The notes: generated from the sequence alone by a model not told the origin. A stretch of DNA of 64,000 bases from Diadema antillarum (GCF_040938485.1 NW_027272096.1:248001-312000); one strand, 5' to 3'. Positions 22,851 to 64,000 are shown, counted from the first letter of the stretch. A program made the numbers and translations.

Positions 22851-22883
<33 letters not shown>

Positions 22884-22900
22884 ACGCTTACAAACACACA

Positions 22901-22934
<34 letters not shown>

Positions 22935-23843: not shown

Positions 23844-23874
<31 letters not shown>

Positions 23875-33400: not shown

Positions 33401-36400
33401 TTTAATAAAACTTTTAATATTTGTCATAGTGGCGCTCTGCTTGTACACAAACGATTATTTGGTACCGCATTATGCCCAGTTTCCTTTTACAGAGAGAAAA
33501 GGCCAGACTGCTTCCAGACCTTGGCCAAATGCGCGGCCATATGTTGAACCGCATTTGGCCATTTTTAAGGGTTTCCAGCGAAAGGAAGGCCAGGCTGAGC
33601 CCGATCTTTTCACTCACTGTAAACGGGGCCTAGGTTAATATGCTGGAGAGGCGTGTTACTTACTGCACATTATCTCATTGATAATTAAACAGAATTCACC
33701 ACGACCAAGACACGAACAGAAGCAACAACCAGACCGGGAACCGAAAGAGCAACAACTGTCATTGAACAAACTACTGCAACTCCTGAATCAACAACTACAA
33801 CTCAGACAACTGTTACATCAACCACTAGTGCAAGGCAGGAATCTACAACGCCAGGTACTTTTTTACTTGCGTTTTTCTAGGACTCCTGTCCCCAGATTCG
33901 AAACCGGAAGGATTTCATTTATTACTAGAGGACAGTTGGACAATTTTTCGCGTTAACGTAACCTGATCTTCCTCTACATTCTGCCTAAATGTATTCAGGA
34001 AGCAAGTCAGTTTCCTACACTGAACAAATGACTGAATACAAATGGTACTATCTCTGAATAAGTTGCACGTGTCATGTTTGCTGAACAAATGTACGCTTCA
34101 TACTCGTCGTCATCGAGGTTATACCTATCTACATTCAACTTTCCAACTTTACCAGGTGCTTGTAGGGAACCACTGGATGGTGTGGATCTTTATACTAATT
34201 TGCAAGTTTTACTGGATAACGAACGTGTTACTGTTCACGCTAATAGCGAATCACCTAAAAAGACAGATTTTGACAATCACAATAGGTGATACGCTGATAC
34301 CGTATCACCTATAGCGTACACATTCTGCAACGTGCGTTTCTCACCTTGGATTTCCGATTCATTTTTGTTTCATTAATCAGCAACGGGCATGGAAACAACA
34401 GTAGTTACAACCGTTGTAACTACAACAGTACCTACCACCACGTCGAAACCCACAACAGTCACTGAAGCTACCACCACAGCTGTTACCACAACAACTCCGA
34501 TGGGTACTACTAGGATGGAGGAGACCACAACTCTTTCTACTACTACTACTCCTGCTCAGACTACAGCAATGGGTAAAGCCTTGTTCTTTTTTTTTTCTCT
34601 CTCTCTCTGGCAAATGAAATTTCTTTATAAATTAATATCGTAAGTTAACACTTCCCTTCTATCCCAATTTAAGGCATGGAATTTAGTTGAGAATAATGTT
34701 CTAAATTGACTACTGGTGGCACTTTAAGACTTAGGAGATTGTCATCGCTACAATACAATACATTGTTATGTATCCCCAAAACAACATTTGCACCAACAAC
34801 TAAAGTAGTAGTAGTGGAGACAACTGCTACTCAGTCGACCATCACATATACCACTTGAGCAACTGAGCAACCAACAACAGCACCAGGTAATTTCCATTCC
34901 ATTCTAATATGATTCATGTCCCATTAAACATCAACGGTAGTGGAACGCTATGGTATGGCCAAAATATTTTACCCAATAACTGAGACGAACGATTGACCAT
35001 TCTTTTCAGAATGCTACGAGCCACAAGAGCCATTGCAAGAAGTCACTACCTTGACATACGAAGCCAGTTTCAGTCAGCCTACTACTATCAGAGGAATAAA
35101 ACTACCTGCCAGCAGCTTCCCTACAATGACTACAGTAGTATTCAGGATCAAGCGCGCCGAAGGAGATGAATGGATTATTGTTCCTGCACAGAGCACAGAA
35201 TCAGGATCTGGTGACTTCTCCGGTTCAGGATCGGGAGAGTCAGAGAATCAGGTAAATCCTAAATAGACAAGTATTCCCTTGTTCTACACAAAACATACAT
35301 TACCACTTCTTGTATTAATACGTTATAAATGAAATGGGCGGTATTTCGCCTGTATCTTCTATTAACCCTTTATGTGTTTTGAGTGTTGATTTGCACGTAC
35401 AACCCTAAAGCATTGTTTACGATATCCAACAACAGTGGATGATGATAGAGAAAGGCTTCACAATATCATCTATCTTCAATCTTCAGTGTACCAGTCCTAC
35501 ATGTAAAATTTCTACAGTTCATCTACTCTGATTCCTCATACTAATACTTTTTATCTTTCTTAGAAAAGCATAATTATGTGACCCCTTTATTGTAGTCGTA
35601 TTTCAAACATATTTGATTTTCCAGATTGACATTTGCATTTTCTGAACGTTGTTTGGTCCAGATATCAAATAGAAAAGTTGTACTAATGCACTGATTAATT
35701 TCGTTGTATTCTTCATAGGGAGAAGTGACGTTTTCTTTGAGTGACTCTGCTCCAACTAACCTCTGGCTTCCATCCGAATTGGGGCCTGTGCGAGCTATCG
35801 AAGCAAGCTTTGGAGATGCACTTAATCTGGGAAATGAAATCGATGTCTACGGCTGTCAGGGTAGGTGCACTTAAACCGACTTATTCACAAACAGCACTCT
35901 TGTGTGGAAAAGTTCTTTTCAGTTCAAACCGAAAAATCTCGTTCACGAATAGAATTCAATCAGTTCTATCTAACGTGTCTGTCGCGATCCCCTTAGATGT
36001 TCTTATTACGCAGAAAAGGTATATACTAAGATTTATTTCTAATCATTTGATTCTTTCTCCATTTATAGATTATAAGACATATTGTATTCCCTCCGTGCTC
36101 TATGAACTGTATAATCAGTGAACTTACAGCATTATAAGTTGTTAGCTATTCCAATATCAATTCCCTTAAAACTGAGAGCATTTTCAGTTGTTAGCTATGG
36201 CCAGATCAATTTCATTAAAAAGGTTCCTATGGATTTATTTTCCCCTTTGTTTGTATATTACCGCAGGACCCACTCTGGCTCCAACCACGAGAGGTACCTC
36301 TCCCCCAGGTAATACATTCCATTTTTATAAAAATATTAGGTTTCCTCGGTTTGGTCAAATACCTTGAAACATTAAATAAGTAAAAAAAACAATATCTCTT

Positions 36401-38460: not shown

Positions 38461-38491
<31 letters not shown>

Positions 38492-41400
38492 GGCAAATGA
38501 ACTTTCTTTATAAATTAATATCGTAAGTTAACACTTCCCTTCTATCCCAATTTAAGGCATGGAATTTAGTTGAGAATAATGTTCTAAATTGACTACTGGT
38601 GGCATTTTAAGACTTAGGAGATTGTCATCGCTACAATACAATACATTGTTATGTATTCCAAAACAACATTTGCACCAACAACTAAAGTGGTAGTAGTGGA
38701 GACAACTGCTACTCAGTCGACCATCACATATACCACTTGAGCAACTGAGCAACCAACAACAGCACCAGGTAATTTCCATTCCATTCTAATACGATTCATG
38801 TCCCATTAGTATAAACATCAACGGTAGTGGAACGCTATGATATGGCCAAAATATTTTACCCAATAACTGAGACGAACGATTGACCATTCTTTTCAGAATG
38901 CTACGAGCCACAAGAGCCATTGCAAGAAGTCACTGCCTTGACATACGAAGCCAGCTTCAGTCAGCCTACTACTATCAGAGGAATCAAACTACCTGCCAGC
39001 AGCTTCCCTACAATGACTACAGTAGTATTCAGGATCAAACGCGCCGAAGGAGATGAATGGATTATTGTTCCTGCACAGAGCACAGAATCAGGATCTGGTG
39101 ACTTCTCCGGTTCAGGATCGGGAGAGTCAGAGAGTCAGGTAAATCCTAAATAGACAAGTATTCCCTTGTTCTACACAGAACATACATTACCACTTCTTGT
39201 ATTAATACGTTATAAAAGGAAAATGGGCGGTATTTCGCCTGTATCTTCTATTAACCCTTTATGTGCTTTGAGTGTTGATTTGCACGTACAACCCTAAAGC
39301 ACTGTATCGATATCCAACGACCATGAATGATAGAGAAATGCTTAACAATATCCTTTATCTTCAGTGTACCAGTCCTAGCTGTCAAATCTCTACTTATCAT
39401 CTTCTCTGATTCATCGTACTAAAACTTGTTATCTTTCTTGGAAAAACATTATTATGTCACCCCTTTATTGCAGTCGTATTTCAAACATATTTGATTTTCC
39501 GGATTTGCATTTGCATTTTCTGAACATTGTTTGGTCCAGACATCAAATTGGAAAGTTGTACTAATGCATTGATTAATTTCTTTGTATTCTTCATAGGGCG
39601 AAGTGACGTTTTCTTTGAGTGACTCTGCTCCAACGAACCTCTGGCTTCCATCCGAATTGGGGCCTGTGCGAGCTATCGAAGCAACCTTTGGAGAAGCACT
39701 TAATCTAGGAAATGAAATCGAGGTCTACGGCTGTCAGGGTAGGTGCACTTTAAGCGACTTATTCAAAAACAACACTCTTATGTGGACAAGTTCTTGTGAG
39801 TTCAAACGGAAAATTCTCATTCACGATTAAAATTCAAACAGTTCTATCTAACGTGTCTCTCGTAATCCTTAAAAGTTCTAGTTACGCAGAAAAGGAATAT
39901 ACTATGATTTATTTCTAATCATTTGATTCTTTATCCATGTATAGATTATAAGACACATCGCATTCACTCCGTGCGCTATGAGCGGTATAATAAGTGAACT
40001 TACAGCATTTTAAGTTGTTAGTTATGGCCAGATCAATTTCATTAAAAAGGTTCCTATGGATTTATTTTCCCCTTTGTTTGTATATTACCGCAGGACCCAC
40101 TCCGGCTCCAACCACGAGAGGTACCTCTCCCCCAGGTAATACATTGTATTTTTATAGAAATATTAGGTTTCCTCGGTTTGGTCAAATACCATGAAACATT
40201 GAATAAGTAAAAAAAATAATAATATTTCTTTTAAAGCTCAATACCACAGCGAAGCGCCAAACGCTGCAATCTCATTTTTTTTCCTCAACATCTAAAGCGA
40301 TGACACTGTTTTGGTTTTTTTTCAAAATACACTTGAAATCATCATCTAAGTCAAGGAAAGAAGGAAAATTGTCTTTGAAGATATAATTATTTCATATTTC
40401 ACCTCTGTCTAATACGACTGTATTCGATCCAGAAGGAGAATGTTCTCATTTGTTTCTTTCTCTCAACATTTACAGAAACGACAACTCTGGGTCAGTCAGG
40501 TAGGCCTACGTCTCCATTGTATTTCTAACCTTTTTGAATTAACATGTACCAAAAAAAGAAAATCAGATATCACTAAATGATAATTGCTTTAAGATCAAAC
40601 TGGTTTCGACTATTCTTCGCCATAAGTCTTCTCTTTAAAAACAAATGTCTCTCAACTGTCAAAAACACTGAGTGAAAGATACATGTGTGTCGTTTTCTCC
40701 TTTTTCACAGAAGTGACAACAAGGACGCGAACGCGAGCGACAACGACTACTGCTCCAGGAACCGAGCAAACAACAGCAGTAGTAGAGGAAACTACTGCCA
40801 CTCCTGAAGCAACAACTACAACTCAGACAACTGTTACATCGACCACAACAGCACGACAGGAATCTACAACGCCAGGTAACTTCTCACTTCCATTTTTCCA
40901 AGACTCGTGTCCGAAGACGTAAAACCTGAATTATAAGGTCACTGTCAAATCAGTCGATGACACCTCAGACCTGACGATTAAGATATCAGCTGTCAGCATA
41001 AGCACAACCAATGGTTCACCCTCCCGATAGCGTTACAATTGGTGTCCTCTCGTCCAGCGATGGACCTGTTGAACGCGAATTTACAGCTCAACCCGGAGAC
41101 GATCAGACTCAAGGAATGTACGAGCTTCGAAACTTGACTGGTTTGAATGAAGTTTATTTCGAAATCACTCTTCCTGACGACTACAACGTGGCAGATTCGG
41201 AATTGACGGTGACATTCAGAGGATGTATTGAAACAGGTAATTTCATTTCTTTATGCGCTGAAGAAGTCCTCATTCATCTCTTTTGTTCTTGTATATGATC
41301 TATACATTTCTCCCACTAAATTTAACCACTACCTGCTGATATTGCAACAGCATATCAACTTTGGAATTTTTGTGTGATCACAAAAAGATGATTGGCAGGT

Positions 41401-41951
41401 TATTGATTTGGTAAAATTTATGTCTATACATTTTTCACCCATTACTCCTGCACTTTAATTCTTTTTTCTAATTAATCAGTCCCTCATCCATCTCTTTTGA
41501 TCGTGTAATGATCCATTCATATATAACCGGTAACTGCTGATATTCCAACAACACATCAACTTCAGAATTTTAAGTAATCACAGAGAAAAAAAAAAGATAA
41601 TTGGCATGTTTATTGCTTTGGTAGGTTTATGTCCATATATTTCTTGCTGATTATTCTGGTACTTTATAACAGTGCACTCAACTTATCAGCAACAATTTCA
41701 CACTACACTACACTACGATTCATTATTGTTTCATTAATCAGCAACGGGCATGGAAACAACAGTAGTTACAACCGTCTGTAACTACAACTGTACCTACCAC
41801 CACGTCGAAACACCACAACAGTCACTGAAGCTACCACCACAGCTGTTACCACAACAACTCCGATGGGGTACTACTAGGATGGAGGAGACCACAAACTCTT
41901 TCTACTACTACTACTCCTGCTCAGACTACAGCAATGGGTAAAAGCCTTGTT

Positions 41952-41982
<31 letters not shown>

Positions 41983-49622: not shown

Positions 49623-49653
<31 letters not shown>

Positions 49654-53452: not shown

Positions 53453-53484
<32 letters not shown>

Positions 53485-56400
53485 GGCAAATGAACTTTCT
53501 TTATAAATTAATATCGTAAGTTAACACTTCCCTTCTATCCCAATTTAAGGCATGGAATTTAGTTGAGAATAATGTTCTAAATTGACTACTGGTGGCATTT
53601 TAAGACTTAGGAGATTGTCATCGCTACAATACAATACATTGTTATGTATTCCAAAACAACATTTGCACCAACAACTAAAGTGGTAGTAGTGGAGACAACT
53701 GCTACTCAGTCGACCATCACATATACCACTTGAGCAACTGAGCAACCAACAACAGCACCAGGTAATTTCCATTCCATTCTAATACGATTCATGTCCCATT
53801 AGTATAAACATCAACGGTAGTGGAACGCTATGGTATGGCCAAAATATTTTACCCAATAACTGAGACGAACGATTGACCATTCTTTTCAGAATGCTACGAG
53901 CCACAAGAGCCATTGCAAGAAGTCACTGCCTTGACATACGAAGCCAGCTTCAGTCAGCCTACTACTATCAGAGGAATCAAACTACCTGCCAGCAGCTTCC
54001 CTACAATGACTACAGTAGTATTCAGGATCAAACGCGCCGAAGGAGATGAATGGATTATTGTTCCTGCACAGAGCACAGAATCAGGATCTGGTGACTTCTC
54101 CGGTTCAGGATCGGGAGAGTCAGAGAGTCAGGTAAATCCTAAATAGACAAGTATTCCCTTGTTCTACACAGAACATACATTACCACTTCTTGTATTAATA
54201 CGTTATAAAAGGAAAATGGGCGGTATTTCGCCTGTATCTTCTATTAACCCTTTATGTGCTTTGAGTGTTGATTTGCACGTACAACCCTAAAGCACTGTAT
54301 CGATATCCAACGACCATGAATGATAGAGAAATGCTTAACAATATCCTTTATCTTCAGTGTACCAGTCCTAGCTGTCAAATCTCTACTTATCATCTTCTCT
54401 GATTCATCGTACTAAAACTTGTTATCTTTCTTGGAAAAACATTATTATGTCACCCCTTTATTGCAGTCGTATTTCAAACATATTTGATTTTCCGGATTTG
54501 CATTTGCATTTTCTGAACATTGTTTGGTCCAGACATCAAATTGGAAAGTTGTACTAATGCATTGATTAATTTCTTTGTATTCTTCATAGGGCGAAGTGAC
54601 GTTTTCTTTGAGTGACTCTGCTCCAACGAACCTCTGGCTTCCATCCGAATTGGGGCCTGTGCGAGCTATCGAAGCAACCTTTGGAGAAGCACTTAATCTA
54701 GGAAATGAAATCGAGGTCTACGGCTGTCAGGGTAGGTGCACTTTAAGCGACTTATTCAAAAACAACACTCTTATGTGGACAAGTTCTTGTGAGTTCAAAC
54801 GGAAAATTCTCGTTCACGATTAAAATTCAAACAGTTCTATCTAACGTGTCTCTCGTAATCCTTAAAAGTTCTAGTTACGCAGAAAAGGAATATACTATGA
54901 TTTATTTCTAATCATTTGATTCTTTATCCATGTATAGATTATAAGACACATTGCATTCACTCCGTGCGCTATGAGCGGTATAATAAGTGAACTTACAGCA
55001 TTTTAAGTTGTTAGTTATGGCCAGATCAATTTCATTAAAAAGGTTCCTATGGATTTATTTTCCCCTTTGTTTGTATATTACCGCAGGACCCACTCCGGCT
55101 CCAACCACGAGAGGTACCTCTCCCCCAGGTAATACATTGTATTTTTATAGAAATATTAGGTTTTCTCGGTTTGGTCAAATACCATGAAACATTGAATAAG
55201 TAAAAAAAATAATAATATTTCTTTTAAAGCTCAATACCACAGCGAAGCGCCAAACGCTGCAATCTCATTTTTTTTCCTCAACATCTAAAGCGATGACACT
55301 GTTTTTTTTTTTTCAAAATACACTTGAAATCATCATCTAAGTCAAGGAAAGAAGGAAAATTGTCTTTGAAGATATAATTATTTCATATTTCACCTCTGTC
55401 TAATACGACTGTATTCGATCCAGAAGGAGAATGTTCTCATTTGTTTCTTTCTCTCAACATTTACAGAAACGACAACTCTGGGTCAGTCAGGTAGGTCTAC
55501 GTCTCCATTGTATTTCTAACCTTTTTGAATTAACATGTACCAAAAAAAGAAAATCAGATATCACTAAATGATAATTGCTTTAAGATCAAACTGGTTTCGA
55601 CTATTCTTCGCCATAAGTCTTCTCTTTAAAAACAAATGTCTCTCAACTGTCAAAAACACTGAGTGAAAGATACATGTGTGTCGTTTTCTCCTTTTTCACA
55701 GAAGTGACAACAAGGACGCGAACGCGAGCGACAACGACTACTGCTCCAGGAACCGAGCAAACAACAGCAGTAGTAGAGGAAACTACTGCCACTCCTGAAG
55801 CAACAACTACAACTCAGACAACTGTTACATCGACCACAACAGCACGACAGGAATCTACAACGCCAGGTAACTTCTCACTTCCATTTTTCCAAGACTCGTG
55901 TCCGAAGACGTAAAACCTGAATTATGTCATGTAAAACTAGAAGGCGGTCACTCAACTCTTTCGTGTTAGCGTAACCTCTTCCTTCATCTTCATTCTGCTT
56001 GATGGTATCCAGCAACCAAGTTTGCTTAACTAAACGAATGACTAAAATGCATATGTTAATATCTCTTTCAATGACTTTAACGTGTTACTGTTCACTTAAC
56101 AATATTGTACCCTACAAATTCGTCGTCACGCCCGTCTACATCCAAGACATTTCTTTTATTTACCAGCTGCTTGCAGAAAACCACTGGATGGCGTGGATCT
56201 TGATACTAAATTGGAAGTTTTACTTGACAACAATAAAACCAACCTTTGGAGCGAACCTACTTCAGAGAGGACAGTGAAGGTCACTGTCAAATCAGTCGAT
56301 GACACCTCAGACCTGACGATTAAGATATCAGCTGTCAGCATAAGCACAACCAATGGTTCACCTCCCGATAGCGTTACAATTGGTGTCCTCTCGTCCAGCG

Positions 56401-57282
56401 ATGGACCTGTTGAACGCGAATTTACAGCTCAACCCGGAGACGATCAGACTCAAGGAATGTACGAGCTTCGAAACTTGACTGGTTTGAATGAAGTTTATTT
56501 CGAAATCACTCTTCCTGACGACTACAACGTGGCAGATTCGGAATTGACGGTGACATTCAGAGGATGTATTGAAACAGGTAATTTCATTTCTTTATGCGCT
56601 GAAGAAGTCCTCATTCATCTCTTTTGTTCTTGTATATGATCTATACATTTCTCCCACTAAATTTAACCACTACCTGCTGATATTGCAACAGCATATCAAC
56701 TTTGGAATTTTGTGTGATCACAAAAAGATGATTGGCAGGTTATTGATTTGGTAAATTTATGTCTATACATTTTTCACCCATTACTCCTGCACTTTAATTC
56801 TTTTTTCTAATTAATCAGTCCTCATCCATCTCTTTTGATCGTGTAATGATCCATTCATATATAACCGGTAACTGCTGATATTCCAACAACACATCAACTT
56901 CAGAATTTTAAGTAATCACAAAGAAAAAAAAAGATAATTGGCATGTTATTGCTTTGGTAGGTTTATGTCCATATATTTCTTGCTGATTATTCTGGTACTT
57001 TATAACAGTGCACTCAACTTATCAGCAACAATTTCACACTACACTACACTACGATTCATTATTGTTTCATTAATCAGCAACGGGCATGGAAACAACAGTA
57101 GTTACAACCGTTGTAACTACAACTGTACCTACCACCACGTCGAAACCCACAACAGTCACTGAAGCTACCACCACAGCTGTTACCACAACAACTCCGATGG
57201 GTACTACTAGGATGGAGGAGACCACAACTCTTTCTACTACTACTACTCCTGCTCAGACTACAGCAATGGGTAAAGCCTTGTT

Positions 57283-57314
<32 letters not shown>

Positions 57315-60300
57315 GGCAAATGAACTTTCTTTATAAATTAATATCGTAAGTTAACACTTCCCTTCTATCCCAATTTAAGGCATGGAATTTAGTTGAGAAT
57401 AATGTTCTAAATTGACTACTGGTGGCATTTTAAGACTTAGGAGATTGTCATCGCTACAATACAATACATTGTTATGTATTCCAAAACAACATTTGCACCA
57501 ACAACTAAAGTGGTAGTAGTGGAGACAACTGCTACTCAGTCGACCATCACATATACCACTTGAGCAACTGAGCAACCAACAACAGCACCAGGTAATTTCC
57601 ATTCCATTCTAATACGATTCATGTCCCATTAGTATAAACATCAACGGTAGTGGAACGCTATGGTATGGCCAAAATATTTTACCCAATAACTGAGACGAAC
57701 GATTGACCATTCTTTTCAGAATGCTACGAGCCACAAGAGCCATTGCAAGAAGTCACTGCCTTGACATACGAAGCCAGCTTCAGTCAGCCTACTACTATCA
57801 GAGGAATCAAACTACCTGCCAGCAGCTTCCCTACAATGACTACAGTAGTATTCAGGATCAAACGCGCCGAAGGAGATGAATGGATTATTGTTCCTGCACA
57901 GAGCACAGAATCAGGATCTGGTGACTTCTCCGGTTCAGGATCGGGAGAGTCAGAGAGTCAGGTAAATCCTAAATAGACAAGTATTCCCTTGTTCTACACA
58001 GAACATACATTACCACTTCTTGTATTAATACGTTATAAAAGGAAAATGGGCGGTATTTCGCCTGTATCTTCTATTAACCCTTTATGTGCTTTGAGTGTTG
58101 ATTTGCACGTACAACCCTAAAGCACTGTATCGATATCCAACGACCATAAATGATAGAGAAATGCTTAACAATATCCTTTATCTTCAGTGTACCAGTCCTA
58201 GCTGTCAAATCTCTACTTATCATCTTCTCTGATTCATCGTACTAAAACTTGTTATCTTTCTTGGAAAAACATTATTATGTCACCCCTTTATTGCAGTCGT
58301 ATTTCAAACATATTTGATTTTCCGGATTTGCATTTGCATTTTCTGAACATTGTTTGGTCCAGACATCAAATTGGAAAGTTGTACTAATGCATTGATTAAT
58401 TTCTTTGTATTCTTCATAGGGCGAAGTGACGTTTTCTTTGAGTGACTCTGCTCCAACGAACCTCTGGCTTCCATCCGAATTGGGGCCTGTGCGAGCTATC
58501 GAAGCAACCTTTGGAGAAGCACTTAATCTAGGAAATGAAATCGAGGTCTACGGCTGTCAGGGTAGGTGCACTTTAAGCGACTTATTCAAAAACAACACTC
58601 TTATGTGGACAAGTTCTTGTGAGTTCAAACGGAAAATTCTCGTTCACGATTAAAATTCAAACAGTTCTATCTAACGTGTCTCTCGTAATCCTTAAAAGTT
58701 CTAGTTACGCAGAAAAGGAATATACTATGATTTATTTCTAATCATTTGATTCTTTATCCATGTATAGATTATAAGACACATTGCATTCACTCCGTGCGCT
58801 ATGAGCGGTATAATAAGTGAACTTACAGCATTTTAAGTTGTTAGTTATGGCCAGATCAATTTCATTAAAAAGGTTCCTATGGATTTATTTTCCCCTTTGT
58901 TTGTATATTACCGCAGGACCCACTCCGGCTCCAACCACGAGAGGTACCTCTCCCCCAGGTAATACATTGTATTTTTATAGAAATATTAGGTTTTCTCGGT
59001 TTGGTCAAATACCATGAAACATTGAATAAGTAAAAAAAATAATAATATTTCTTTTAAAGCTCAATACCACAGCGAAGCGCCAAACGCTGCAATCTCATTT
59101 TTTTTCCTCAACATCTAAAGCGATGACACTGTTTTTTTTTTTTCAAAATACACTTGAAATCATCATCTAAGTCAAGGAAAGAAGGAAAATTGTCTTTGAA
59201 GATATAATTATTTCATATTTCACCTCTGTCTAATACGACTGTATTCGATCCAGAAGGAGAATGTTCTCATTTGTTTCTTTCTCTCAACATTTACAGAAAC
59301 GACAACTCTGGGTCAGTCAGGTAGGTCTACCTCTCCATTGTATTTCTAACCTTTTTGAATTAACATGTACCAAAAAAAGAAAATCAGATATCACTAAATG
59401 ATAATTGCTTTAAGATCAAACTGGTTTCGACTATTCTTCGCCATAAGTCTTCTCTTTAAAAACAAATGTCTCTCAACTGTCAAAAACACTGAGTGAAAGA
59501 TACATGTGTGTCGTTTTCTCCTTTTTCACAGAAGTGACAACAAGGACGCGAACGCGAGCGACAACGACTACTGCTCCAGGAACCGAGCAAACAACAGCAG
59601 TAGTAGAGGAAACTACTGCCACTCCTGAAGCAACAACTACAACTCAGACAACTGTTACATCGACCACAACAGCACGACAGGAATCTACAACGCCAGGTAA
59701 CTTCTCACTTCCATTTTTCCAAGACTCGTGTCCGAAGACGTAAAACCTGAATTATGTCATGTAAAACTAGAAGGCGGTCACTCAACTCTTTCGTGTTAGC
59801 GTAACCTCTTCCTTCATCTTCATTCTGCTTGATGGTATCCAGCAACCAAGTTTGCTTAACTAAACGAATGACTAAAATGCATATGTTAATATCTCTTTCA
59901 ATGACTTTAACGTGTTACTGTTCACTTAACAATATTGTACCCTACAAATTCGTCGTCACGCCCGTCTACATCCAAGACATTTCTTTTATTTACCAGCTGC
60001 TTGCAGAAAACCACTGGATGGCGTGGATCTTGATACTAAATTGGAAGTTTTACTTGACAACAATAAAACCAACCTTTGGAGCGAACCTACTTCAGAGAGG
60101 ACAGTGAAGGTCACTGTCAAATCAGTCGATGACACCTCAGACCTGACGATTAAGATATCAGCTGTCAGCATAAGCACAACCAATGGTTCACCTCCCGATA
60201 GCGTTACAATTGGTGTCCTCTCGTCCAGCGATGGACCTGTTGAACGCGAATTTACAGCTCAACCCGGAGACGATCAGACTCAAGGAATGTACGAGCTTCG

Positions 60301-61112
60301 AAACTTGACTGGTTTGAATGAAGTTTATTTCGAAATCACTCTTCCTGACGACTACAACGTGGCAGATTCGGAATTGACGGTGACATTCAGAGGATGTATT
60401 GAAACAGGTAATTTCATTTCTTTATGCGCTGAAGAAGTCCTCATTCATCTCTTTTGTTCTTGTATATGATCTATACATTTCTCCCACTAAATTTAACCAC
60501 TACCTGCTGATATTGCAACAGCATATCAACTTTGGAATTTTGTGTGATCACAAAAAGATGATTGGCAGGTTATTGATTTGGTAAATTTATGTCTATACAT
60601 TTTTCACCCATTACTCCTGCACTTTAATTCTTTTTTCTAATTAATCAGTCCTCATCCATCTCTTTTGATCGTGTAATGATCCATTCATATATAACCGGTA
60701 ACTGCTGATATTCCAACAACACATCAACTTCAGAATTTTAAGTAATCACAAAGAAAAAAAAAGATAATTGGCATGTTATTGCTTTGGTAGGTTTATGTCC
60801 ATATATTTCTTGCTGATTATTCTGGTACTTTATAACAGTGCACTCAACTTATCAGCAACAATTTCACACTACACTACACTACGATTCATTATTGTTTCAT
60901 TAATCAGCAACGGGCATGGAAACAACAGTAGTTACAACCGTTGTAACTACAACTGTACCTACCACCACGTCGAAACCCACAACAGTCACTGAAGCTACCA
61001 CCACAGCTGTTACCACAACAACTCCGATGGGTACTACTAGGATGGAGGAGACCACAACTCTTTCTACTACTACTACTCCTGCTCAGACTACAGCAATGGG
61101 TAAAGCCTTGTT

Positions 61113-61147
<35 letters not shown>

Positions 61148-64000
61148 CAAATGAACTTTCTTTATAAATTAATATCGTAAGTTAACACTTCCCTTCTATC
61201 CCAATTTAAGGCATGGAATTTAGTTGAGAATAATGTTCTAAATTGACTACTGGTGGCATTTTAAGACTTAGGAGATTGTCATCGCTACAATACAATACAT
61301 TGTTATGTATTCCAAAACAACATTTGCACCAACAACTAAAGTGGTAGTAGTGGAGACAACTGCTACTCAGTCGACCATCACATATACCACTTGAGCAACT
61401 GAGCAACCAACAACAGCACCAGGTAATTTCCATTCCATTCTAATACGATTCATGTCCCATTAGTATAAACATCAACGGTAGTGGAACGCTATGGTATGGC
61501 CAAAATATTTTACCCAATAACTGAGACGAACGATTGACCATTCTTTTCAGAATGCTACGAGCCACAAGAGCCATTGCAAGAAGTCACTGCCTTGACATAC
61601 GAAGCCAGCTTCAGTCAGCCTACTACTATCAGAGGAATCAAACTACCTGCCAGCAGCTTCCCTACAATGACTACAGTAGTATTCAGGATCAAACGCGCCG
61701 AAGGAGATGAATGGATTATTGTTCCTGCACAGAGCACAGAATCAGGATCTGGTGACTTCTCCGGTTCAGGATCGGGAGAGTCAGAGAGTCAGGTAAATCC
61801 TAAATAGACAAGTATTCCCTTGTTCTACACAGAACATACATTACCACTTCTTGTATTAATACGTTATAAAAGGAAAATGGGCGGTATTTCGCCTGTATCT
61901 TCTATTAACCCTTTATGTGCTTTGAGTGTTGATTTGCACGTACAACCCTAAAGCACTGTATCGATATCCAACGACCATGAATGATAGAGAAATGCTTAAC
62001 AATATCCTTTATCTTCAGTGTACCAGTCCTAGCTGTCAAATCTCTACTTATCATCTTCTCTGATTCATCGTACTAAAACTTGTTATCTTTCTTGGAAAAA
62101 CATTATTATGTCACCCCTTTATTGCAGTCGTATTTCAAACATATTTGATTTTCCGGATTTGCATTTGCATTTTCTGAACATTGTTTGGTCCAGACATCAA
62201 ATTGGAAAGTTGTACTAATGCATTGATTAATTTCTTTGTATTCTTCATAGGGCGAAGTGACGTTTTCTTTGAGTGACTCTGCTCCAACGAACCTCTGGCT
62301 TCCATCCGAATTGGGGCCTGTGCGAGCTATCGAAGCAACCTTTGGAGAAGCACTTAATCTAGGAAATGAAATCGAGGTCTACGGCTGTCAGGGTAGGTGC
62401 ACTTTAAGCGACTTATTCAAAAACAACACTCTTATGTGGACAAGTTCTTGTGAGTTCAAACGGAAAATTCTCGTTCACGATTAAAATTCAAACAGTTCTA
62501 TCTAACGTGTCTCTCGTAATCCTTAAAAGTTCTAGTTACGCAGAAAAGGAATATACTATGATTTATTTCTAATCATTTGATTCTTTATCCATGTATAGAT
62601 TATAAGACACATTGCATTCACTCCGTGCGCTATGAGCGGTATAATAAGTGAACTTACAGCATTTTAAGTTGTTAGTTATGGCCAGATCAATTTCATTAAA
62701 AAGGTTCCTATGGATTTATTTTCCCCTTTGTTTGTATATTACCGCAGGACCCACTCCGGCTCCAACCACGAGAGGTACCTCTCCCCCAGGTAATACATTG
62801 TATTTTTATAGAAATATTAGGTTTTCTCGGTTTGGTCAAATACCATGAAACATTGAATAAGTAAAAAAAATAATAATATTTCTTTTAAAGCTCAATACCA
62901 CAGCGAAGCGCCAAACGCTGCAATCTCATTTTTTTTCCTCAACATCTAAAGCGATGACACTGTTTTTTTTTTTTCAAAATACACTTGAAATCATCATCTA
63001 AGTCAAGGAAAGAAGGAAAATTGTCTTTGAAGATATAATTATTTCATATTTCACCACTGTCTAATACGACTGTATTCGATCCAGAAGGAGAATGTTCTCA
63101 TTTGTTTCTTTCTCTCAACATTTACAGAAACGACAACTCTGGGTCAGTCAGGTAGGTCTACGTCTCCATTGTATTTCTAACCTTTTTGAATTAACATGTA
63201 CCAAAAAAAGAAAATCAGATATCACTAAATGATAATTGCTTTAAGATCAAACTGGTTTCGACTATTCTTCGCCATAAGTCTTCTCTTTAAAAACAAAAGT
63301 CTCTCAACTGTCAAAAACACTGAGTGAAAGATACATGTGTGTCGTTTTCTCCTTTTTCACAGAAGTGACAACAAGGACGCGAACGCGAGCGACAACGACT
63401 ACTGCTCCAGGAACCGAGCAAACAACAGCAGTAGTAGAGGAAACTACTGCCACTCCTGAAGCAACAACTACAACTCAGACAACTGTTACATCGACCACAA
63501 CAGCACGACAGGAATCTACAACGCCAGGTAACTTCTCACTTCCATTTTTCCAAGACTCGTGTCCGAAGACGTAAAACCTGAATTATGTCATGTAAAACTA
63601 GAAGGCGGTCACTCAACTCTTTCGTGTTAGCGTAACCTCTTCCTTCATCTTCATTCTGCTTGATGGTATCCAGCAACCAAGTTTGCTTAACTAAACGAAT
63701 GACTAAAATGCATATGTTAATATCTCTTTCAATGACTTTAACGTGTTACTGTTCACTTAACAATATTGTACCCTACAAATTCGTCGTCACGCCCGTCTAC
63801 ATCCAAGACATTTCTTTTATTTACCAGCTGCTTGCAGAAAACCACTGGATGGCGTGGATCTTGATACTAAATTGGAAGTTTTACTTGACAACAATAAAAC
63901 CAACCTTTGGAGCGAACCTACTTCAGAGAGGACAGTGAAGGTCACTGTCAAATCAGTCGATGACACCTCAGACCTGACGATTAAGATATCAGCTGTCAGC
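1..64000 (+). CDS. Partial giant multi-exon secreted mucin/proteoglycan-like gene (PTS linkers + TIL + VWC + FA58C + divergent discoidin-like modules); extends beyond both window edges
   Basis: About 95 AG/GT-bounded exons join in one frame with matching phases and no internal stop, except for 1-nt indels in array copies 2-3. Domain mix resembles invertebrate gel-forming mucin / hemolectin / SCO-spondin-type proteins; no orthologue can be named from sequence alone. Confidence 0.85.
115..327. other. Assembly gap (213 N)
   Basis: Run of N. Confidence 1.
420..567. other. Assembly gap (148 N)
   Basis: Run of N. Confidence 1.
843..984 (+). CDS. Exon B: C-terminal half of mini discoidin-like module
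   Basis: catag|GGT...CAAG|gtaggt, 142 nt, phase 0-1; GEVSFILSDTAATNLWLPSELGTVRAIQATFGAPLSSVNIIEVYGCQ. Confidence 0.85.
1458..1517 (+). CDS. PTS linker exon
   Basis: cactag|GG...GCAG|gtaata, 60 nt, phase 1-1; ASSTAPPTTMASSTEATTA. Confidence 0.75.
2637..2807 (+). CDS. PTS (Thr-rich mucin) exon
   Basis: ttacag|AA...CCAG|gtaatt, 171 nt, phase 1-1; ITSPKVSTRGTTTSIPGTEQTT...TYTTSATEQPTTAP. Confidence 0.85.
3144..3391 (+). CDS. Exon A: N-terminal half of mini discoidin-like module with (SG)n loop
   Basis: tttcag|AA TGC...CAG|gtgaat, 248 nt, phase 1-0; CYEPQEPL...TYEASFSQPTTIAGIKL...EGDEW...DSGSGSGDFSGSGSGDSETQ. Confidence 0.9.
3696..4045 (+). mobile_element. tRNA-derived SINE with Deu-domain-like core, in the A-B intron
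   Basis: Pol III A box TAGCTAAACCGG (3706-3717), B box GGTTCCATTCC (3749-3759), core motifs GGAGGTCCCGT...GCACGTAAAAGATCCC...AAGAGCAGGG recalled from Deu-domain SINEs, (AAAC)n-like tail near 4033-4045. No clear TSD. Confidence 0.7.
4103..4244 (+). CDS. Exon B: C-terminal half of mini discoidin-like module
   Basis: gcatag|GGC...GAGG|gtaagt, 142 nt, phase 0-1; GEVTVALSDSASTNIWLPSTLGPVRAIQATFGAPLNLGNEIKVYGCE. Confidence 0.9.
4669..4704 (+). CDS. PTS micro-exon
   Basis: ttacag|CG...CCTG|gtaatg, 36 nt, phase 1-1; VTTTAPSTTAP. Confidence 0.75.
5471..5488 (+). CDS. Candidate 18-nt micro-exon
   Basis: ttgacag|TATCACCACAAGACACCG|gtaaaa, phase 1-1; VSPQDT. Confidence 0.45.
5567..5594. repeat. (TA)n microsatellite
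   Basis: Direct reading. Confidence 0.9.
5968..7315 (+). CDS. VWC domain 1 (10 Cys), three exons: 5968-6020, 6615-6725, 7225-7315
   Basis: Phases 1-0, 0-0, 0-1, all GT-AG; STTQAICYFAPTGESYQ / GGESFPYGNCETCICMVGQGIECFPDSCNLDPEDCST / GETVVHTADGCCQCRAIPTT. Confidence 0.85.
8493..8703. mobile_element. MITE with 8-bp TSD (hAT-like) and telomere-like CCCTAA internal repeats
   Basis: Imperfect ~35-bp TIRs (8493-8527 and 8670-8703, core TTTGCTC..GCGACAATTGCTCC); identical flanks CTGCAAAT at 8485-8492 and 8704-8711. Confidence 0.85.
8885..9099 (+). CDS. TIL domain plus start of VWC domain 2
   Basis: tatag|CG...GAG|gtatcc, 215 nt, phase 1-0; CLYPMVYRENCDCHRTCDD...CERGCFCQEGMVL...CVTKESCVTDCEYNGNVYE. 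Confidence 0.9.
9934..10756 (+). CDS. Remainder of VWC domain 2, exons 9934-10029 and 10705-10756
   Basis: LGETWKDSCYDCICEPDREVQCTPVCDLTCGS / GEELIYPDNNECCYCAP; phases 0-0 and 0-1, both donors gtaagt. Confidence 0.85.
11353..11394 (+). CDS. Pro-rich linker exon
   Basis: ttacag|CT...CCTA|gtaagt, 42 nt, phase 1-1; PTTALPTPPPPPP. Confidence 0.8.
11587..11750. mobile_element. Palindromic MITE, PIF/Harbinger-like (CAG TSD)
   Basis: Arms GGGCCCGTTGCA..AAGTTACAATTATGGTAACTTTGCCATCCAAT and its reverse complement; CAG at 11584-11586 and 11751-11753. Confidence 0.85.
11993..12942 (+). CDS. Atypical TIL-like domain plus short VWC/E-type module, exons 11993-12213 and 12831-12942
   Basis: CDITEEATSC...SPCCECKKGETLHNGTRCVPIMECPCLDASGERRE / AHERWSNPLKECETCRCSSNSIVCYPTANCTTSTTTP; CVP..ECPC is the mucin/VWF TIL-E junction pattern; phases 1-0, 0-1. 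Confidence 0.85.
13529..13573 (+). CDS. PTS linker exon
   Basis: ctcacag|TC...CCAG|gtatgc, 45 nt, phase 1-1; ITTAAPTTTPLLPP. Confidence 0.8.
13973..15154 (+). CDS. Canonical FA58C / discoidin (F5/8 type C) domain, exons 13973-14277 and 15010-15154
   Basis: DCYSVLGLE...AWVP...WLQVDFSVPTRVTGIDTQG..EWVSRFHIEY...GRPM / LFKANSDGDSIVSN...IRILP...IALRIELRGCQ carries all family hallmarks; phases 1-0, 0-1. Confidence 0.93.
15225..15402. mobile_element. MITE related to the 11587 element (PIF/Harbinger-like)
   Basis: TIR GGCCCCGTTGC(A/T)AGAAA at both ends; TSD not conserved. Confidence 0.6.
16853..18065 (+). CDS. Three PTS linker exons: 16853-16879, 17438-17512, 18012-18065
   Basis: 27, 75 and 54 nt, all phase 1-1; IISVPTTT / PPSTPQVTTRPATTPPTTEATTFQ / TTEPARTTTTISSTTTR. 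The 17438 acceptor (aaaaag) is weak. Confidence 0.7.
18569..19000 (+). CDS. One-exon divergent discoidin-like module D1
   Basis: gacag|GT...GAAG|gttagc, 432 nt, phase 1-1; VCEEPM...FTKPVTVRRV...FVDANNSP...LTADFLGCEKE; only 2 Cys, one at each end. Confidence 0.85.
19331..19681. mobile_element. TTAA-flanked non-autonomous element (piggyBac-like)
   Basis: TTAA|CTCTTTT at 19327-19337 and AAAAGAG|TTAA at 19675-19685; TIR is short. Confidence 0.55.
19802..19960 (+). CDS. PTS linker exon (159 nt)
   Basis: gtatag|TA...GAAG|gtgagt, phase 1-1; TTVETTTVTRTSATTSETEPTTRTEIVVTTTKTTTGPG... Confidence 0.85.
20592..21017 (+). CDS. One-exon divergent discoidin-like module D2
   Basis: ttgcag|GG...CCAG|gtaata, 426 nt, phase 1-1; ECRDDM...FNRPVIVNV...FTDVNGTP...VNAGFLGCVP. 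Confidence 0.85.
21448..22305 (+). CDS. Large PTS mucin exon (286 codons)
   Basis: taacag|AG...AAAG|gtgagg, 858 nt, phase 1-1, open throughout; Thr/Pro/Ser dominated with PEVTT(S/T)KL-type octamers. Confidence 0.85.
22851..22933. repeat. Compound (CT)n/(CA)n microsatellite
   Basis: Direct reading. Confidence 0.9.
23103..23240. repeat. (ATT/ATC/ATG)n low-complexity tract with a 42-bp duplication
   Basis: TCATTACCATTGTTGTCACTATTATCATTATCATTA starts at both 23161 and 23203; lies just upstream of the D3 acceptor. Confidence 0.85.
23253..23678 (+). CDS. One-exon divergent discoidin-like module D3
   Basis: tttcag|GT...GAAG|gtaaaa, 426 nt, phase 1-1; QCEDPM...FSESVIVRRV...FVDADNNQ...LNAEFFGCIEE. 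Confidence 0.85.
24382..25132 (+). CDS. PTS linker exons 24382-24540 (159 nt) and 25061-25132 (72 nt)
   Basis: Both phase 1-1; TVVETTTAVRTPVPTTTQAPETTKTELLTTTKT... / TTTAAPSSEIYTERTTIVTTPIT. Confidence 0.8.
25525..26459 (+). CDS. 8-Cys VWC-like domain a, exons 25525-25553, 25945-26049, 26426-26459
   Basis: CEIDGTVLQ / TNESLQDPNDNCTVFRCLDNGLFSRTDYVCEMPCK / TTYPPGCCDGC; phases 1-0, 0-0, 0-1. Confidence 0.8.
27097..27102 (+). CDS. Candidate 6-nt micro-exon
   Basis: cttttacag|CAAGTA|gtaagt; frame-neutral, gives Ser-Ser-Thr across the junctions. Confidence 0.55.
27316..27856. mobile_element. Long palindromic MITE with AGG...CCT ends and TTAA-type TSD (Kolobok-like)
   Basis: Inverted arms over 200 bp (e.g. 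GAACACATCAGTGAAAGTTTGGG and GATGAGAAGACTACTA with reverse complements); right end CCT|TTAA, left TGAA|AGG. Confidence 0.8.
28005..28040. repeat. (TG)n microsatellite
   Basis: Direct reading; abuts the LINE remnant. Confidence 0.9.
28041..29090 (+). mobile_element. Decayed 3' fragment of a Tx1/L1-clade LINE
   Basis: Broken frame gives ...KYREFQYK..., then CSFC / EEETYPHIFLFCKQVQRTW (28288-28368), the C-terminal CCHC knuckle pattern of L1/Tx1 ORF2; AATAAA and A-rich tail near 29063-29088; stops and frameshifts present. Confidence 0.7.
29180..29209 (+). CDS. Linker micro-exon
   Basis: ttatcag|CT...GATG|gtgagt, 30 nt, phase 1-1; TTVKGPSID. Confidence 0.75.
29873..31577 (+). CDS. 8-Cys VWC-like domain b, exons 29873-29901, 30301-30417, 31538-31577
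   Basis: CTYGGVTYQ / VGSTIYNIRKQVPCYVVICGKSGRPEWVPEVYNCSEQCD / DDVSYPSGCCDEC; phases 1-0, 0-0, 0-1. Confidence 0.8.
30541..30700. mobile_element. Tc1/mariner-type MITE (TA TSD)
   Basis: TA|CAATGAAACCTG..GCGGCCACC and GGTGGTCGC..CAGGTTTGACTG|TA; imperfect ~26-bp TIRs. Confidence 0.7.
32110..33854 (+). CDS. PTS exons 32110-32172, 33079-33102, 33693-33854
   Basis: 63, 24 and 162 nt, phase 1-1; the last two are diverged paralogues of the array's 24-nt micro-exon and T2 exon. Confidence 0.8.
33234..33261. repeat. Poly-C tract (about C28)
   Basis: Direct reading. Confidence 0.9.
33286..33628. mobile_element. GC-rich MITE (PIF/Harbinger-like ends)
   Basis: Perfect 14-bp TIR CCCCGTTTACAGTG (33286-33299) / CACTGTAAACGGGG (33615-33628); TSD unclear. 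Confidence 0.75.
34156..34289 (+). pseudogene. Truncated relic of the array D exon
   Basis: Intact acceptor tttaccag; ACREPLDGVDLYTNLQVLLDN matches ACRKPLDGVDLDTKLEVLLDN, then similarity is lost and TGA occurs at 34287-34289. Confidence 0.75.
34381..37754 (+). CDS. Array unit 1 (407 aa): T1 34381-34572, A 35010-35251, B 35719-35860, m1 36267-36308, m2 36641-36664, T2 36876-37043, D 37344-37754
   Basis: All GT-AG; lengths 192, 242, 142, 42, 24, 168, 411; frame continuous. Confidence 0.85.
34735..34886 (+). pseudogene. Stop-containing PTS exon relic present in every unit
   Basis: ...TQSTITYTT*ATEQPTTAP with intact CAG|gtaatt donor; TGA at 34856, 38738, 42230, 46069, 49900, 53731, 57561, 61392; the paralogous exon 2637-2807 has TCA (2777-2779). 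Confidence 0.75.
37851..38156. repeat. Old ~100-bp direct duplication inside the D-T1 intron (period 198 bp), repeated in each unit
   Basis: CTGCTGATATT..AACA..CA.ATCAACTT..GAATTTT...GATTGGCA.GTTATTG.TTTGGTA..TTTATGTC at 37851 and 38049. Confidence 0.75.
38256..41236 (+). CDS. Array unit 2: T1 38256-38447, A 38897-39138, B 39597-39738, m1 40094-40135, m2 40476-40499, T2 40711-40875; D exon broken (40935-41236)
   Basis: 351 bp missing at 40934|40935 removes the D acceptor and the first 110 coding nt. Confidence 0.75.
41742..45088 (+). CDS. Array unit 3: T1 41742-41937, A 42390-42631, B 43094-43236, m1 43595-43636, m2 43978-44001, T2 44213-44377, D 44678-45088
   Basis: T1 (+4 nt) and B (+1 nt) carry single-base insertions and are frameshifted as assembled; probably consensus errors. 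Confidence 0.65.
45589..48916 (+). CDS. Array unit 4 (406 aa): T1 45589-45780, A 46228-46469, B 46928-47069, m1 47425-47466, m2 47806-47829, T2 48041-48205, D 48506-48916
   Basis: Intact exons and splice sites, 1218 coding nt. Confidence 0.85.
49418..52747 (+). CDS. Array unit 5 (406 aa): T1 49418-49609, A 50059-50300, B 50759-50900, m1 51256-51297, m2 51637-51660, T2 51872-52036, D 52337-52747
   Basis: Intact exons and splice sites. Confidence 0.85.
53248..56577 (+). CDS. Array unit 6 (406 aa): T1 53248-53439, A 53890-54131, B 54590-54731, m1 55087-55128, m2 55467-55490, T2 55702-55866, D 56167-56577
   Basis: Intact exons and splice sites. Confidence 0.85.
57078..60407 (+). CDS. Array unit 7 (406 aa): T1 57078-57269, A 57720-57961, B 58420-58561, m1 58917-58958, m2 59297-59320, T2 59532-59696, D 59997-60407
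   Basis: Intact exons and splice sites. Confidence 0.85.
60908..64000 (+). CDS. Array unit 8 (partial): T1 60908-61099, A 61551-61792, B 62251-62392, m1 62748-62789, m2 63128-63151, T2 63363-63527, D from 63828 to window end
   Basis: Intact up to the window edge. Confidence 0.85.

What the first reader, a model, noticed from the sequence alone, without database searches (positions are those of the whole stretch)
34381..64000. Near-identical 3.83-kb seven-exon tandem array: a VNTR whose unit is a multi-exon gene segment
Seen: at least 7.7 copies, with introns as homogeneous as exons; each adds 406 aa (T1-A-B-m1-m2-T2-D), alternating the SG-loop module and the D module between Thr-rich spacers. 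Known: vertebrate mucin VNTRs are usually short repeats inside one large exon, and intron-level identity implies very recent expansion or concerted evolution by unequal crossover. Inference: protein length and GAG valence could vary between alleles in 406-aa steps, and identical splice sites in every copy permit unit-skipping isoforms.
Basis: partly seen in the sequence, partly recalled or inferred. Interest (0 to 1): 0.85.

Follow-up and report, generated by a model that had tools for sequence, protein, structure and literature searches.

The report
Repeated seven-exon cassette, sea-urchin glycoprotein gene
A giant secreted glycoprotein gene of the sea urchin Diadema contains a real, transcribed head-to-tail array of a 3.8-kb seven-exon block that crossover between copies keeps almost identical, an echinoderm counterpart of the known human LPA and DMBT1 coding repeats rather than a new kind of thing.

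Summary
From 34355 to the window end there are 7.7 head-to-tail copies of a 3.83-kb unit. Core copies are 99.7-100% identical. Each carries seven exons totalling 1218 nt, or 406 aa.

RNA contigs from the same species show a GT..AG joint at every predicted junction. That includes D of one unit spliced to T1 of the next, and T1 spliced to A, which skips a stop-bearing relic exon.

Contig word depth in two DNA runs is 14-46 times that of the single-copy flank. The array is therefore not over-expanded and probably holds more copies than the window shows.

A sister array of 2.34-kb units occurs in D. antillarum and D. setosum. Its units are 99-100% alike within a species and 94% alike between species, the signature of concerted evolution.

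Both globular modules look like divergent discoidin (F5/8 type C) beta-sandwiches. The fold model supports this for D; for A-B it is only a lead.

Caveats:
- 40313-43815 looks like an unpolished long-read patch: 24 single-base insertions and a 351-bp deletion that break two units.
- Copy-number polymorphism is only suggested.
- GAG attachment and unit-skipping isoforms are untested.

This is a new member of a known kind, the multi-exon coding VNTR. First-stage notes on this genome report similar cassette arrays on other DNA.

The parts
34355..64000 (+). Tandem array of 3.83-kb exon-intron cassettes, 7.74 units, cut by the window end
34355..34951 (+). u0p: partial first unit (T1 exon 34381-34572, relic exon, start of the T1-A intron). 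The left edge of the array lies in the D-T1 intron.
   Evidence: In one search a loose end at 34355 in X1 shows that other copies continue into unit sequence there.
34952..38838 (+). u1: intact 407-aa unit and a mosaic (5' 2 kb diverged, 3' 1.8 kb identical to the core). Exons: A 35010-35251, B 35719-35860, m1 36267-36308, m2 36641-36664, T2 36876-37043, D 37344-37754, T1 38256-38447.
   Evidence: All junctions are seen in RNA contigs.
38839..42330 (+). u2: 3492-bp unit. A 351-bp deletion at 40934/40935 removes the D acceptor and the first 110 nt of D. There are 1-bp insertions in D and T1.
42331..46169 (+). u3: full unit with a 1-bp insertion in exon B (43192) and further ones in introns
40313..43815 (.). 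Zone of 24 single-base insertions with no excess of substitutions; probably an unpolished long-read patch of the assembly
   Evidence: PMC13511894 describes ONT patching of the D. antillarum assembly. That the window comes from that assembly is an inference.
46170..50000 (+). u4: intact 406-aa unit
50001..53831 (+). u5: reference unit. Exons: A 50059-50300, B 50759-50900, m1 51256-51297, m2 51637-51660, T2 51872-52036, D 52337-52747, T1 53248-53439.
53832..57661 (+). u6: intact unit, 2 substitutions against u5
57662..61492 (+). u7: intact unit, 4 substitutions against u5
61493..64000 (+). u8p: unit cut by the window end inside exon D, no substitution against u5
53650..53779 (+). Relic of an eighth Thr-rich exon with an in-frame TGA (reference copy). 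The same motif is at 34850, 38732, 42224, 46063, 49894, 53725, 57555 and 61386. The older copy at 2594-2812 reads Ser there.
   Evidence: It is skipped in RNA contig X6 record 16, which joins T1 to A.
33689..34286 (+). Degenerate older unit at the array's left flank: a T2-like exon (33689-33877, 74% to the unit) and a truncated D-like exon (34062-34286)
843..4243 (+). Older single copies of the cassette's modules upstream: B-like 843-983, Thr-rich exon 2594-2812, A-like 3146-3328 with its own Ser-Gly loop, B-like 4103-4243 (74-79% aa identity)
8767..24542 (+). Upstream exons on the same strand, taken to be the same gene: TIL (8767-9168), TIL/VWC-like (11863-12900), F5/8 type C (13939-14340 and 14959-15168), D1-D3 two-cysteine modules (18574-18993, 20594-21019, 23255-23671), and a 297-aa Pro/Thr/Ser exon (21432-22322)
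   Evidence: Linkage to the array in one transcript is inferred, not shown.

Best explanation
The region is an intragenic macrosatellite. A 3.83-kb cassette of seven exons and their introns is repeated head to tail inside one very large gene for a secreted, Thr-rich (23% Thr) glycoprotein. The species is a Diadema sea urchin, most likely D. antillarum.

Every cassette is read in frame and adds 406 aa in this order:
- a Thr-rich linker (T1);
- a small two-cysteine beta domain split over exons A and B, which carries an acidic Ser-Gly loop;
- three short Thr/Pro linker exons (m1, m2, T2);
- a second two-cysteine beta domain (D), whose predicted fold resembles discoidin / F5-8 type C domains.

Borders between cassettes are all phase 1, so any whole number of cassettes keeps the frame.

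The copies stay nearly identical, introns included, because unequal crossover and gene conversion between misaligned copies homogenise the array faster than mutation separates the copies. Edge copies escape this and decay: u1 is a mosaic, and the flank holds a degenerate unit.

Shown: the array, the exon structure, splicing, high copy number, selection on exons, and concerted evolution of the sister array.

Inferred: secretion and heavy O-glycosylation, carbohydrate or matrix binding by the beta domains, GAG attachment at the Ser-Gly loop, and copy-number differences between individuals.
For: Array and exon arithmetic.

Splicing. RNA contigs X6 and X7 of the same organism show GT..AG joints at:
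- A|B, 35249>35717
- B|m1, 35859>36266
- m1|m2, 36305>36638
- m2|T2, 36661>36873
- T2|D, 37039>37340
- D>T1 of the next unit, 37751>34378. This joint is absent from the DNA runs.
- T1>A, in X6 record 16.

Copy number. Contig word depth is 483 (D region) and 215 (T1-A intron) against 10.6-14.2 in the flank for X1. For X2 it is 115 and 51 against 4-8.3.

Selection. In the diverged half of u1, exons differ 2.1% and introns 7.0%, p = 2e-6. D against the paralogous D gives dN/dS 0.43.

Concerted evolution. Sister-array units are 98.7-100% alike within a species, 93.6-94.4% alike between D. antillarum and D. setosum, and 81-82% alike to the window type. Core-unit intron divergence of 0.2% is a tenth of the species' 2.52% heterozygosity (PMC13511894).

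Gene context: TIL and F5/8 type C exons lie upstream.
Against: - Two of the eight units are out of frame as assembled (u2, u3). I read these as assembly errors but could not check them with reads.
- No Pfam family matches A, B, D, T1 or T2.
- hhalign finds no link between A-B, D and the gene's own F5/8 type C domain.
- Single-copy upstream exons have no RNA contigs, so the link between the array and the N-terminal exons in one transcript is not shown.
- Word depth of assembled contigs is a rough measure. It cannot say whether the extra copies lie in this array or elsewhere.
- The tissue and level of expression are unknown.
Confidence: 0.85

Rival explanations
1. Assembly over-expansion: the genome has one or two cassettes, and the assembler looped reads through them.
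For: The units are longer than half the mean HiFi read (6.8 kb) used for the public D. antillarum assembly. A patch-like error zone sits inside the array.
Against: In two DNA runs the unit's contigs have 14-46 times the word depth of flank contigs. Array exons in the RNA contigs reach depth 16-22 while single-copy upstream exons have none. Units carry private substitutions, and u1 is distinct. Independent assemblies of two species show the same kind of array at the sister locus.
Confidence: 0.03
2. Decaying or non-coding array: the repeats are a pseudogenised tail, and translation stops at the first relic TGA exon or at the frameshifts in u2/u3.
For: The TGA relic exon is in every unit. u2 and u3 are out of frame in the assembly. 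There is low-depth RNA over the T1-A intron in X7.
Against: The RNA contig joins T1 directly to A, skipping the relic exon. X7 record 24 runs unspliced across the relic's putative donor, as pre-mRNA would. Five full units and both partial ones have open frames and intact AG/GT borders. Exons are conserved 3.3 times better than introns where units differ. Most of the frame-breaking changes copy a neighbouring base, and all are confined to one 3.5-kb zone that includes introns.
Confidence: 0.08
3. Very recent burst of duplication, with no ongoing homogenisation: the copies are alike only because they are young.
For: Core units differ by 0-0.4%. The window alone cannot tell the two processes apart.
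Against: The sister array has the same 2.34-kb unit and many copies in two species that differ by 6% there, yet its units are 99-100% alike within each species. That would need parallel recent bursts in both lineages. The mosaic u1, with a sharp breakpoint near unit position 2000, looks like a conversion or crossover tract.
Confidence: 0.15

Closest known systems
LPA kringle IV type 2 coding VNTR (human)
   Same: The unit is several kilobases long and contains exons plus introns (5.6 kb and 1-40 units per allele; PMC11462820). The units are nearly identical, in frame, and each adds a folded domain to a secreted protein.
   Different: The LPA unit has two exons coding for one kringle. Here the unit has seven exons coding for two beta-sandwich domains plus glycosylated linkers. 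Copy-number polymorphism is documented for LPA and only suggested here. The sequences are unrelated.
DMBT1 / salivary agglutinin SRCR-SID repeat CNV (human)
   Same: It is a secreted mucin-like glycoprotein in which binding domains alternate with Ser/Thr-rich spacers. These are encoded by tandemly repeated exon groups whose number varies (PMC9038570).
   Different: DMBT1 uses SRCR domains, not discoidin-like ones. Balancing selection and microbe binding are shown for DMBT1, and nothing of that kind is shown here.
Echinoderm secreted discoidin-domain glycoproteins (sea-urchin Nectin, sea-star Sfp1)
   Same: They are extracellular echinoderm proteins built from several F5/8 type C domains. In Sfp1 these sit with TIL, VWD and C8 modules, and the proteins are held to bind galactose or GlcNAc-bearing molecules (PMC7037938). 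The window's gene has TIL and a bona fide F5/8 type C domain upstream.
   Different: Nectin has six canonical discoidin domains and no Thr-rich linkers or cassette array. The A-B and D modules here do not match the Pfam model. No expression in adhesive organs is known.
Sister array of 2.34-kb cassettes (XP_071476389.1 in D. antillarum and its D. setosum counterpart, both named 'uncharacterized protein')
   Same: It has the same m2-T2-D-T1 exons, with 75% aa identity in D and 90% nt identity in T1. It is also tandem, homogenised and transcribed.
   Different: It lacks exons A, B and m1 and the relic exon. It is 81-82% identical in DNA, so it split from the window type before the two species did.

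Membership tests
Multi-exon coding VNTR (intragenic macrosatellite, LPA KIV-2 type) | Head-to-tail copies of a unit that holds two or more exons with their introns | tested here: met
   7.74 units of 3.83 kb with seven exons each
Multi-exon coding VNTR (intragenic macrosatellite, LPA KIV-2 type) | Units are spliced in frame into one mRNA, across unit borders | tested here: met
   RNA joints for all six intra-unit junctions, plus D>T1 of the next unit. Frame arithmetic: 1218 nt, with phase 1 at both unit ends.
Multi-exon coding VNTR (intragenic macrosatellite, LPA KIV-2 type) | High identity between units, introns included | tested here: met
   Core units differ 0.20% in introns and 0.04% in exons
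Multi-exon coding VNTR (intragenic macrosatellite, LPA KIV-2 type) | Number of units differs between individuals or alleles | tested here: inconclusive
   The unit/flank word-depth ratio is 34-46 in X1 and 14-29 in X2. The baselines are unresolved: heterozygous or homozygous flank contigs.
F5/8 type C (discoidin) domain, for module D | Match to the family's sequence profile (Pfam PF00754) | tested here: not met
   No Pfam hit even at E = 10. hhalign against the gene's own F5/8 type C domain is not significant.
F5/8 type C (discoidin) domain, for module D | Eight-stranded beta-sandwich fold superposable on solved discoidin domains | tested here: inconclusive
F5/8 type C (discoidin) domain, for module D | Cysteines at the start and end of the domain, which join the termini by a disulfide in factor V/VIII C domains (established knowledge) | tested here: met
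   C2 and C133 are invariant in D1-D4 and their relatives. The bond itself is not testable here.
Gel-forming mucin (MUC2/MUC5 type) | N-terminal VWD-C8-TIL assemblies and a C-terminal cystine knot | tested here: inconclusive
   TIL exons were found, and no VWD or C8 among the upstream ORFs scanned. The gene's ends lie outside the window.
Gel-forming mucin (MUC2/MUC5 type) | Long Pro/Thr/Ser region in one large exon built of short repeats | tested here: not met
   For the array, the Thr-rich parts are separate 24-192-nt exons inside a 3.83-kb cassette. One 297-aa Pro/Thr/Ser exon exists upstream at 21432-22322.
Proteoglycan core protein | Ser-Gly dipeptides flanked by acidic residues, the xylosyltransferase acceptor consensus (established knowledge) | tested here: met
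   Exon A ends in an acidic Ser-Gly run, E-S-G-S-G-D-F-S-G-S-G-S-G-E-S-E. The older copy at 3131-3424 gives a sub-threshold Serglycin hit, E = 0.02.
Proteoglycan core protein | A glycosaminoglycan chain is actually attached | not testable with these tools
   Needs biochemistry

The most novel reading that the evidence does not exclude
The array is a hypervariable valence dial. Individuals of D. antillarum would carry very different numbers of cassettes, tens per haplotype. They would therefore carry different numbers of lectin-like discoidin domains and Ser-Gly glycan sites on a surface or mucus glycoprotein. Host-microbe interaction would maintain this variation, as proposed for DMBT1, which makes it potentially relevant to a species struck by pathogen-driven mass mortality.
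Probability: 0.12. Interest if true: 0.7.

Novelty: new member of a known kind. Interest (0 to 1): 0.45.

Why it matters
- It is a clean non-vertebrate example of a coding repeat whose unit is a whole seven-exon block. Comparative evidence shows that such arrays are kept uniform for millions of years.
- Current assemblies and annotations of Diadema mishandle the locus. There is a patch-like error zone, and at the sister array the gene models are 548-aa and 558-aa fragments named 'uncharacterized protein'.
- The two globular modules have almost no sequence relatives. D has 2 hits among 1.8 billion representative proteins. They probably belong to a lineage-restricted branch of discoidin-like domains.
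- If copy number varies, the protein's length and glycan load would vary in 406-aa steps in a keystone reef species.

Tried and rejected
- TRF returned no rows because its period limit is 500. It was replaced by a k-mer distance histogram and BLAST.
- Pfam on all cassette exons found nothing usable.
- phmmer of D against 1.84 billion representatives gave only two hits, both Diadema-type. No wider family is visible by sequence.
- Foldseek against PDB and AFDB clusters gave only TM 0.3-0.5 jelly-roll or CBM matches. The VIA-align second look was more telling.
- Local hhalign of A-B against D, and of each against the window's F5/8 type C domain, was not significant.
- The fold of A-B was not predicted. 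The spliced product has no reference, and I did not type it in.
- I first took L001 (D. antillarum) for the orthologue in another species. I rejected that reading because RNA of the window's own organism contains exact L001 27- and 29-mers, and a D. setosum protein is 89% identical to the L001 type. L001 is a paralogous array of the same species.
- The idea that the 2.25-fold higher depth of the D half proves extra short units is left open. Summed depth over the A and B exon bins (388-525) is close to that of D (483), so variant 5' halves explain it equally well.
- A search of earlier findings by sequence was blank, which means nothing.
- The first call of the look-up of sequencing runs found the machine busy. 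The same request was repeated.

Full report
**1. Observation**

The window has no short-period tandem repeat (TRF stops at period 500). A 25-mer self-distance histogram nevertheless has a sharp peak at 3830/3831 bp.

BLAST of one unit against the window tiles 34355-64000 without gaps:
- a partial unit at 34355-34951;
- full units starting at 34952, 38839, 42331, 46170, 50001, 53832 and 57662;
- a last unit cut by the window end.

That makes 7.74 units. Identity to the reference unit (50001-53831) is 95.1% for the first full unit and 99.0-99.96% for the rest.

On the + strand each unit holds seven open segments with AG/GT borders:

| Exon | Length (nt) |
|---|---|
| A | 242 |
| B | 142 |
| m1 | 42 |
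| m2 | 24 |
| T2 | 165 |
| D | 411 |
| T1 | 192 |

They total 1218 nt, or 406 aa. Phase is 1 at every border except A|B, which is phase 0.

**2. Is it real DNA, and is it expressed?**

One reads call was available. I laid two DNA-type runs (X1, X2) and two transcriptome-sized runs (X6, X7) of 'organism A' on 32500-38100. This stretch covers the unique flank, the array edge and most of u1.

The RNA contigs show GT..AG joints at every predicted junction:
- A|B, 35249>35717
- B|m1, 35859>36266
- m1|m2, 36305>36638
- m2|T2, 36661>36873
- T2|D, 37039>37340
- a 'goes back 3374' joint, 37751>34378, which is D spliced to T1 of the following unit. It is seen in both RNA runs and in neither DNA run.

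X6 record 16 reads T1 (34378-34571), then A (35009-35249), then B (35717-35859).

Flank contigs in X1 have word depths of 14.2, 11.3 and 10.6. Unit contigs have 214.8 (T1-A intron) and 483.3 (D region). In X2 the flank values are 4.6, 4.0 and 8.3, against 50.6 and 115.2 for the unit contigs.

The genome holds more copies of the unit than the window shows, not fewer.

Word depth of assembled contigs is rough. It cannot place the extra copies, which could be further along this array or elsewhere.

The D half has 2.25 times the depth of the core T1-A intron in both runs. Two readings fit this: additional short units without A-B, or variant 5' halves. Summed depth over the A and B exon bins is 388-525, and a variant A-exon loose end appears at 35037.

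**3. Fine structure**

The first full unit is a mosaic. Its first 2 kb differ from the core by 5-12% per 250-bp bin, and its last 1.8 kb are identical apart from one base. In that diverged half, exons differ by 2.1% and introns by 7.0%, Fisher p = 2e-6. The exons are therefore under purifying selection.

Among core units, introns differ by 0.20% and exons by 0.04%. 'Introns as homogeneous as exons' is thus nearly true, but not quite.

To the left of the array lies a degenerate older unit, with a T2-like exon at 33689-33877 and a truncated D-like exon at 34062-34286. Further upstream are older single copies of A, B and a Thr-rich exon at 843-4243, with 74-79% aa identity.

Every unit also holds the relic of an eighth Thr-rich exon with an in-frame TGA. 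The older copy at 2594-2812 has Ser at that codon. The RNA contig skips the relic. The low-depth RNA over that intron in X7 runs unspliced across the relic's donor, as pre-mRNA would.

**4. A flaw in the assembly**

Units u2 and u3 are out of frame as assembled. All 24 single-base insertions that set them apart lie between 40313 and 43815, in introns and exons alike. Most repeat a neighbouring base, and there is no excess of substitutions. A 351-bp deletion at 40934/40935 adjoins them.

This is the signature of an unpolished long-read patch. The paper on the public D. antillarum assembly states that HiFi contigs (mean read 6.8 kb) were patched with nanopore reads from other individuals (PMC13511894).

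That the window comes from that assembly is my inference. If the inference holds, the number of units in the assembly is not a reliable allele length.

**5. Organism and relatives**

phmmer of module D against 1.84 billion representative proteins found two proteins only:
- XP_071476389.1 of Diadema antillarum, named 'uncharacterized protein', 75% identical;
- an ORF on a Tara metagenome contig, 91% identical.

The D. antillarum locus (L001) carries a tandem array of 2.34-kb units made of m2-T2-D-T1 only.

RNA contigs of organism A contain exact 27- and 29-mers of L001. The same organism's DNA contigs match the window at 99-100%.

A D. setosum protein is 89% identical to the L001 type. Its locus (L003) has the same 2.34-kb array.

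**6. Concerted evolution**

Identity over the m2-to-D segment:

| Comparison | Identity |
|---|---|
| Sister-array units within D. antillarum, five core units | 99.1-100% |
| Sister-array units within D. setosum | 98.7-100% |
| Sister-array units between the two species | 93.6-94.4% |
| Sister-array units against the window's type | 81-82% |

An array with the same unit length and content in two species, uniform within each but 6% apart between them, is the classic signature of homogenisation by unequal crossover or gene conversion.

For the window's own array the evidence is indirect. Its units differ by a tenth of the species' heterozygosity, 0.2% against 2.52%. Its edge unit is a mosaic with a sharp breakpoint. 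The D. setosum orthologue of the long-unit array was not retrieved.

**7. What the cassette encodes**

The 406-aa product is 23% Thr. D and A-B each begin and end with a cysteine.

Evidence on module D:
- No Pfam family matches any cassette exon.
- An AlphaFold model of D, built on a six-sequence alignment, has pLDDT 77.7 and pTM 0.73 and is an eight-stranded all-beta domain.
- Foldseek gives only weak jelly-roll or CBM hits.
- Language-model neighbours of D (0.94) and of exon A (0.89) are F5/8 type C clusters.

I therefore read both modules as compact, strongly diverged discoidin-like domains. This is fold-level support for D and a lead only for A-B. Sequence-profile membership was tested and not met.

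Exon A ends in an acidic Ser-Gly run that fits the acceptor consensus for glycosaminoglycan initiation (established knowledge). Attachment is untested.

Upstream on the same strand lie TIL exons, a bona fide F5/8 type C domain, three more D-type modules and a 297-aa Pro/Thr/Ser exon. This module set recalls secreted echinoderm glycoproteins such as Nectin and Sfp1 (PMC7037938).

That these exons and the array form one transcript is inferred. Single-copy exons are below the assembly threshold in the RNA runs.

**8. Comparison and verdict**

The closest known systems are:
- the LPA kringle IV-2 repeat, 5.6 kb per unit and 1-40 units per allele (PMC11462820);
- the DMBT1 SRCR/SID repeat (PMC9038570).

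The array meets three of the four defining features of a multi-exon coding VNTR. The fourth, variable number, is only hinted at: depth ratios are 34-46 in X1 and 14-29 in X2.

It is a new member of a known kind. The finding is well documented and useful for annotating Diadema genomes, but not surprising to a specialist.

First-stage notes on other pieces of this genome report similar intragenic cassette arrays, so the phenomenon may be common here.

Noticed in passing
window 40313-43815: There are 24 single-base insertions, most of them repeating a neighbouring base, and a 351-bp deletion at 40934/40935, with no excess of substitutions. This looks like an unpolished nanopore patch in the assembly, and it creates false frameshifts in two units.
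   Followed up: partly
window 33248-33621: Interspersed repeat of very high copy number just left of the array. Word depth is 11,305 in X1 and 2,578 in X2, against about 14 and 4.5 in the neighbouring flank. Many loose ends and small joints occur there.
   Followed up: no
L001 9668-23231 (D. antillarum) and L003 1-16011 (D. setosum): Sister tandem array of 2.34-kb four-exon cassettes (m2-T2-D-T1). It is homogenised within each species and 6% apart between them. Its last D. antillarum unit (21375-23231) is degenerate and frameshifted. NCBI models cut the array into 548-aa and 558-aa 'uncharacterized proteins'.
   Followed up: yes
L002 (Tara metagenome scaffold, 1809 bp): A marine metagenome contig carries sea-urchin DNA with a window-type D exon (95% nt, 91% aa). 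After a T1-like stretch it seems to run directly into the m2 region, that is, a short unit with the window's type of D, probably from a Pacific Diadema relative.
   Followed up: partly
window 52776-53172 (and the same place in every unit): A roughly 211-bp tandem duplication inside the D-T1 intron. The two halves are 73% alike.
   Followed up: no
window 53440-53485 (and the same place in every unit): A (CT)n microsatellite directly after the T1 donor site. It is the most length-variable spot between units, with indels of 1-9 bp in six units.
   Followed up: no
window 18574-23671: Three single-exon two-cysteine modules (D1-D3) are 16-20% identical to D of the array. They share only the terminal cysteines and a few hydrophobic positions, and have no Pfam match.
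   Followed up: partly
window 115-327 and 420-567: Two runs of N, masked or gaps.
   Followed up: no
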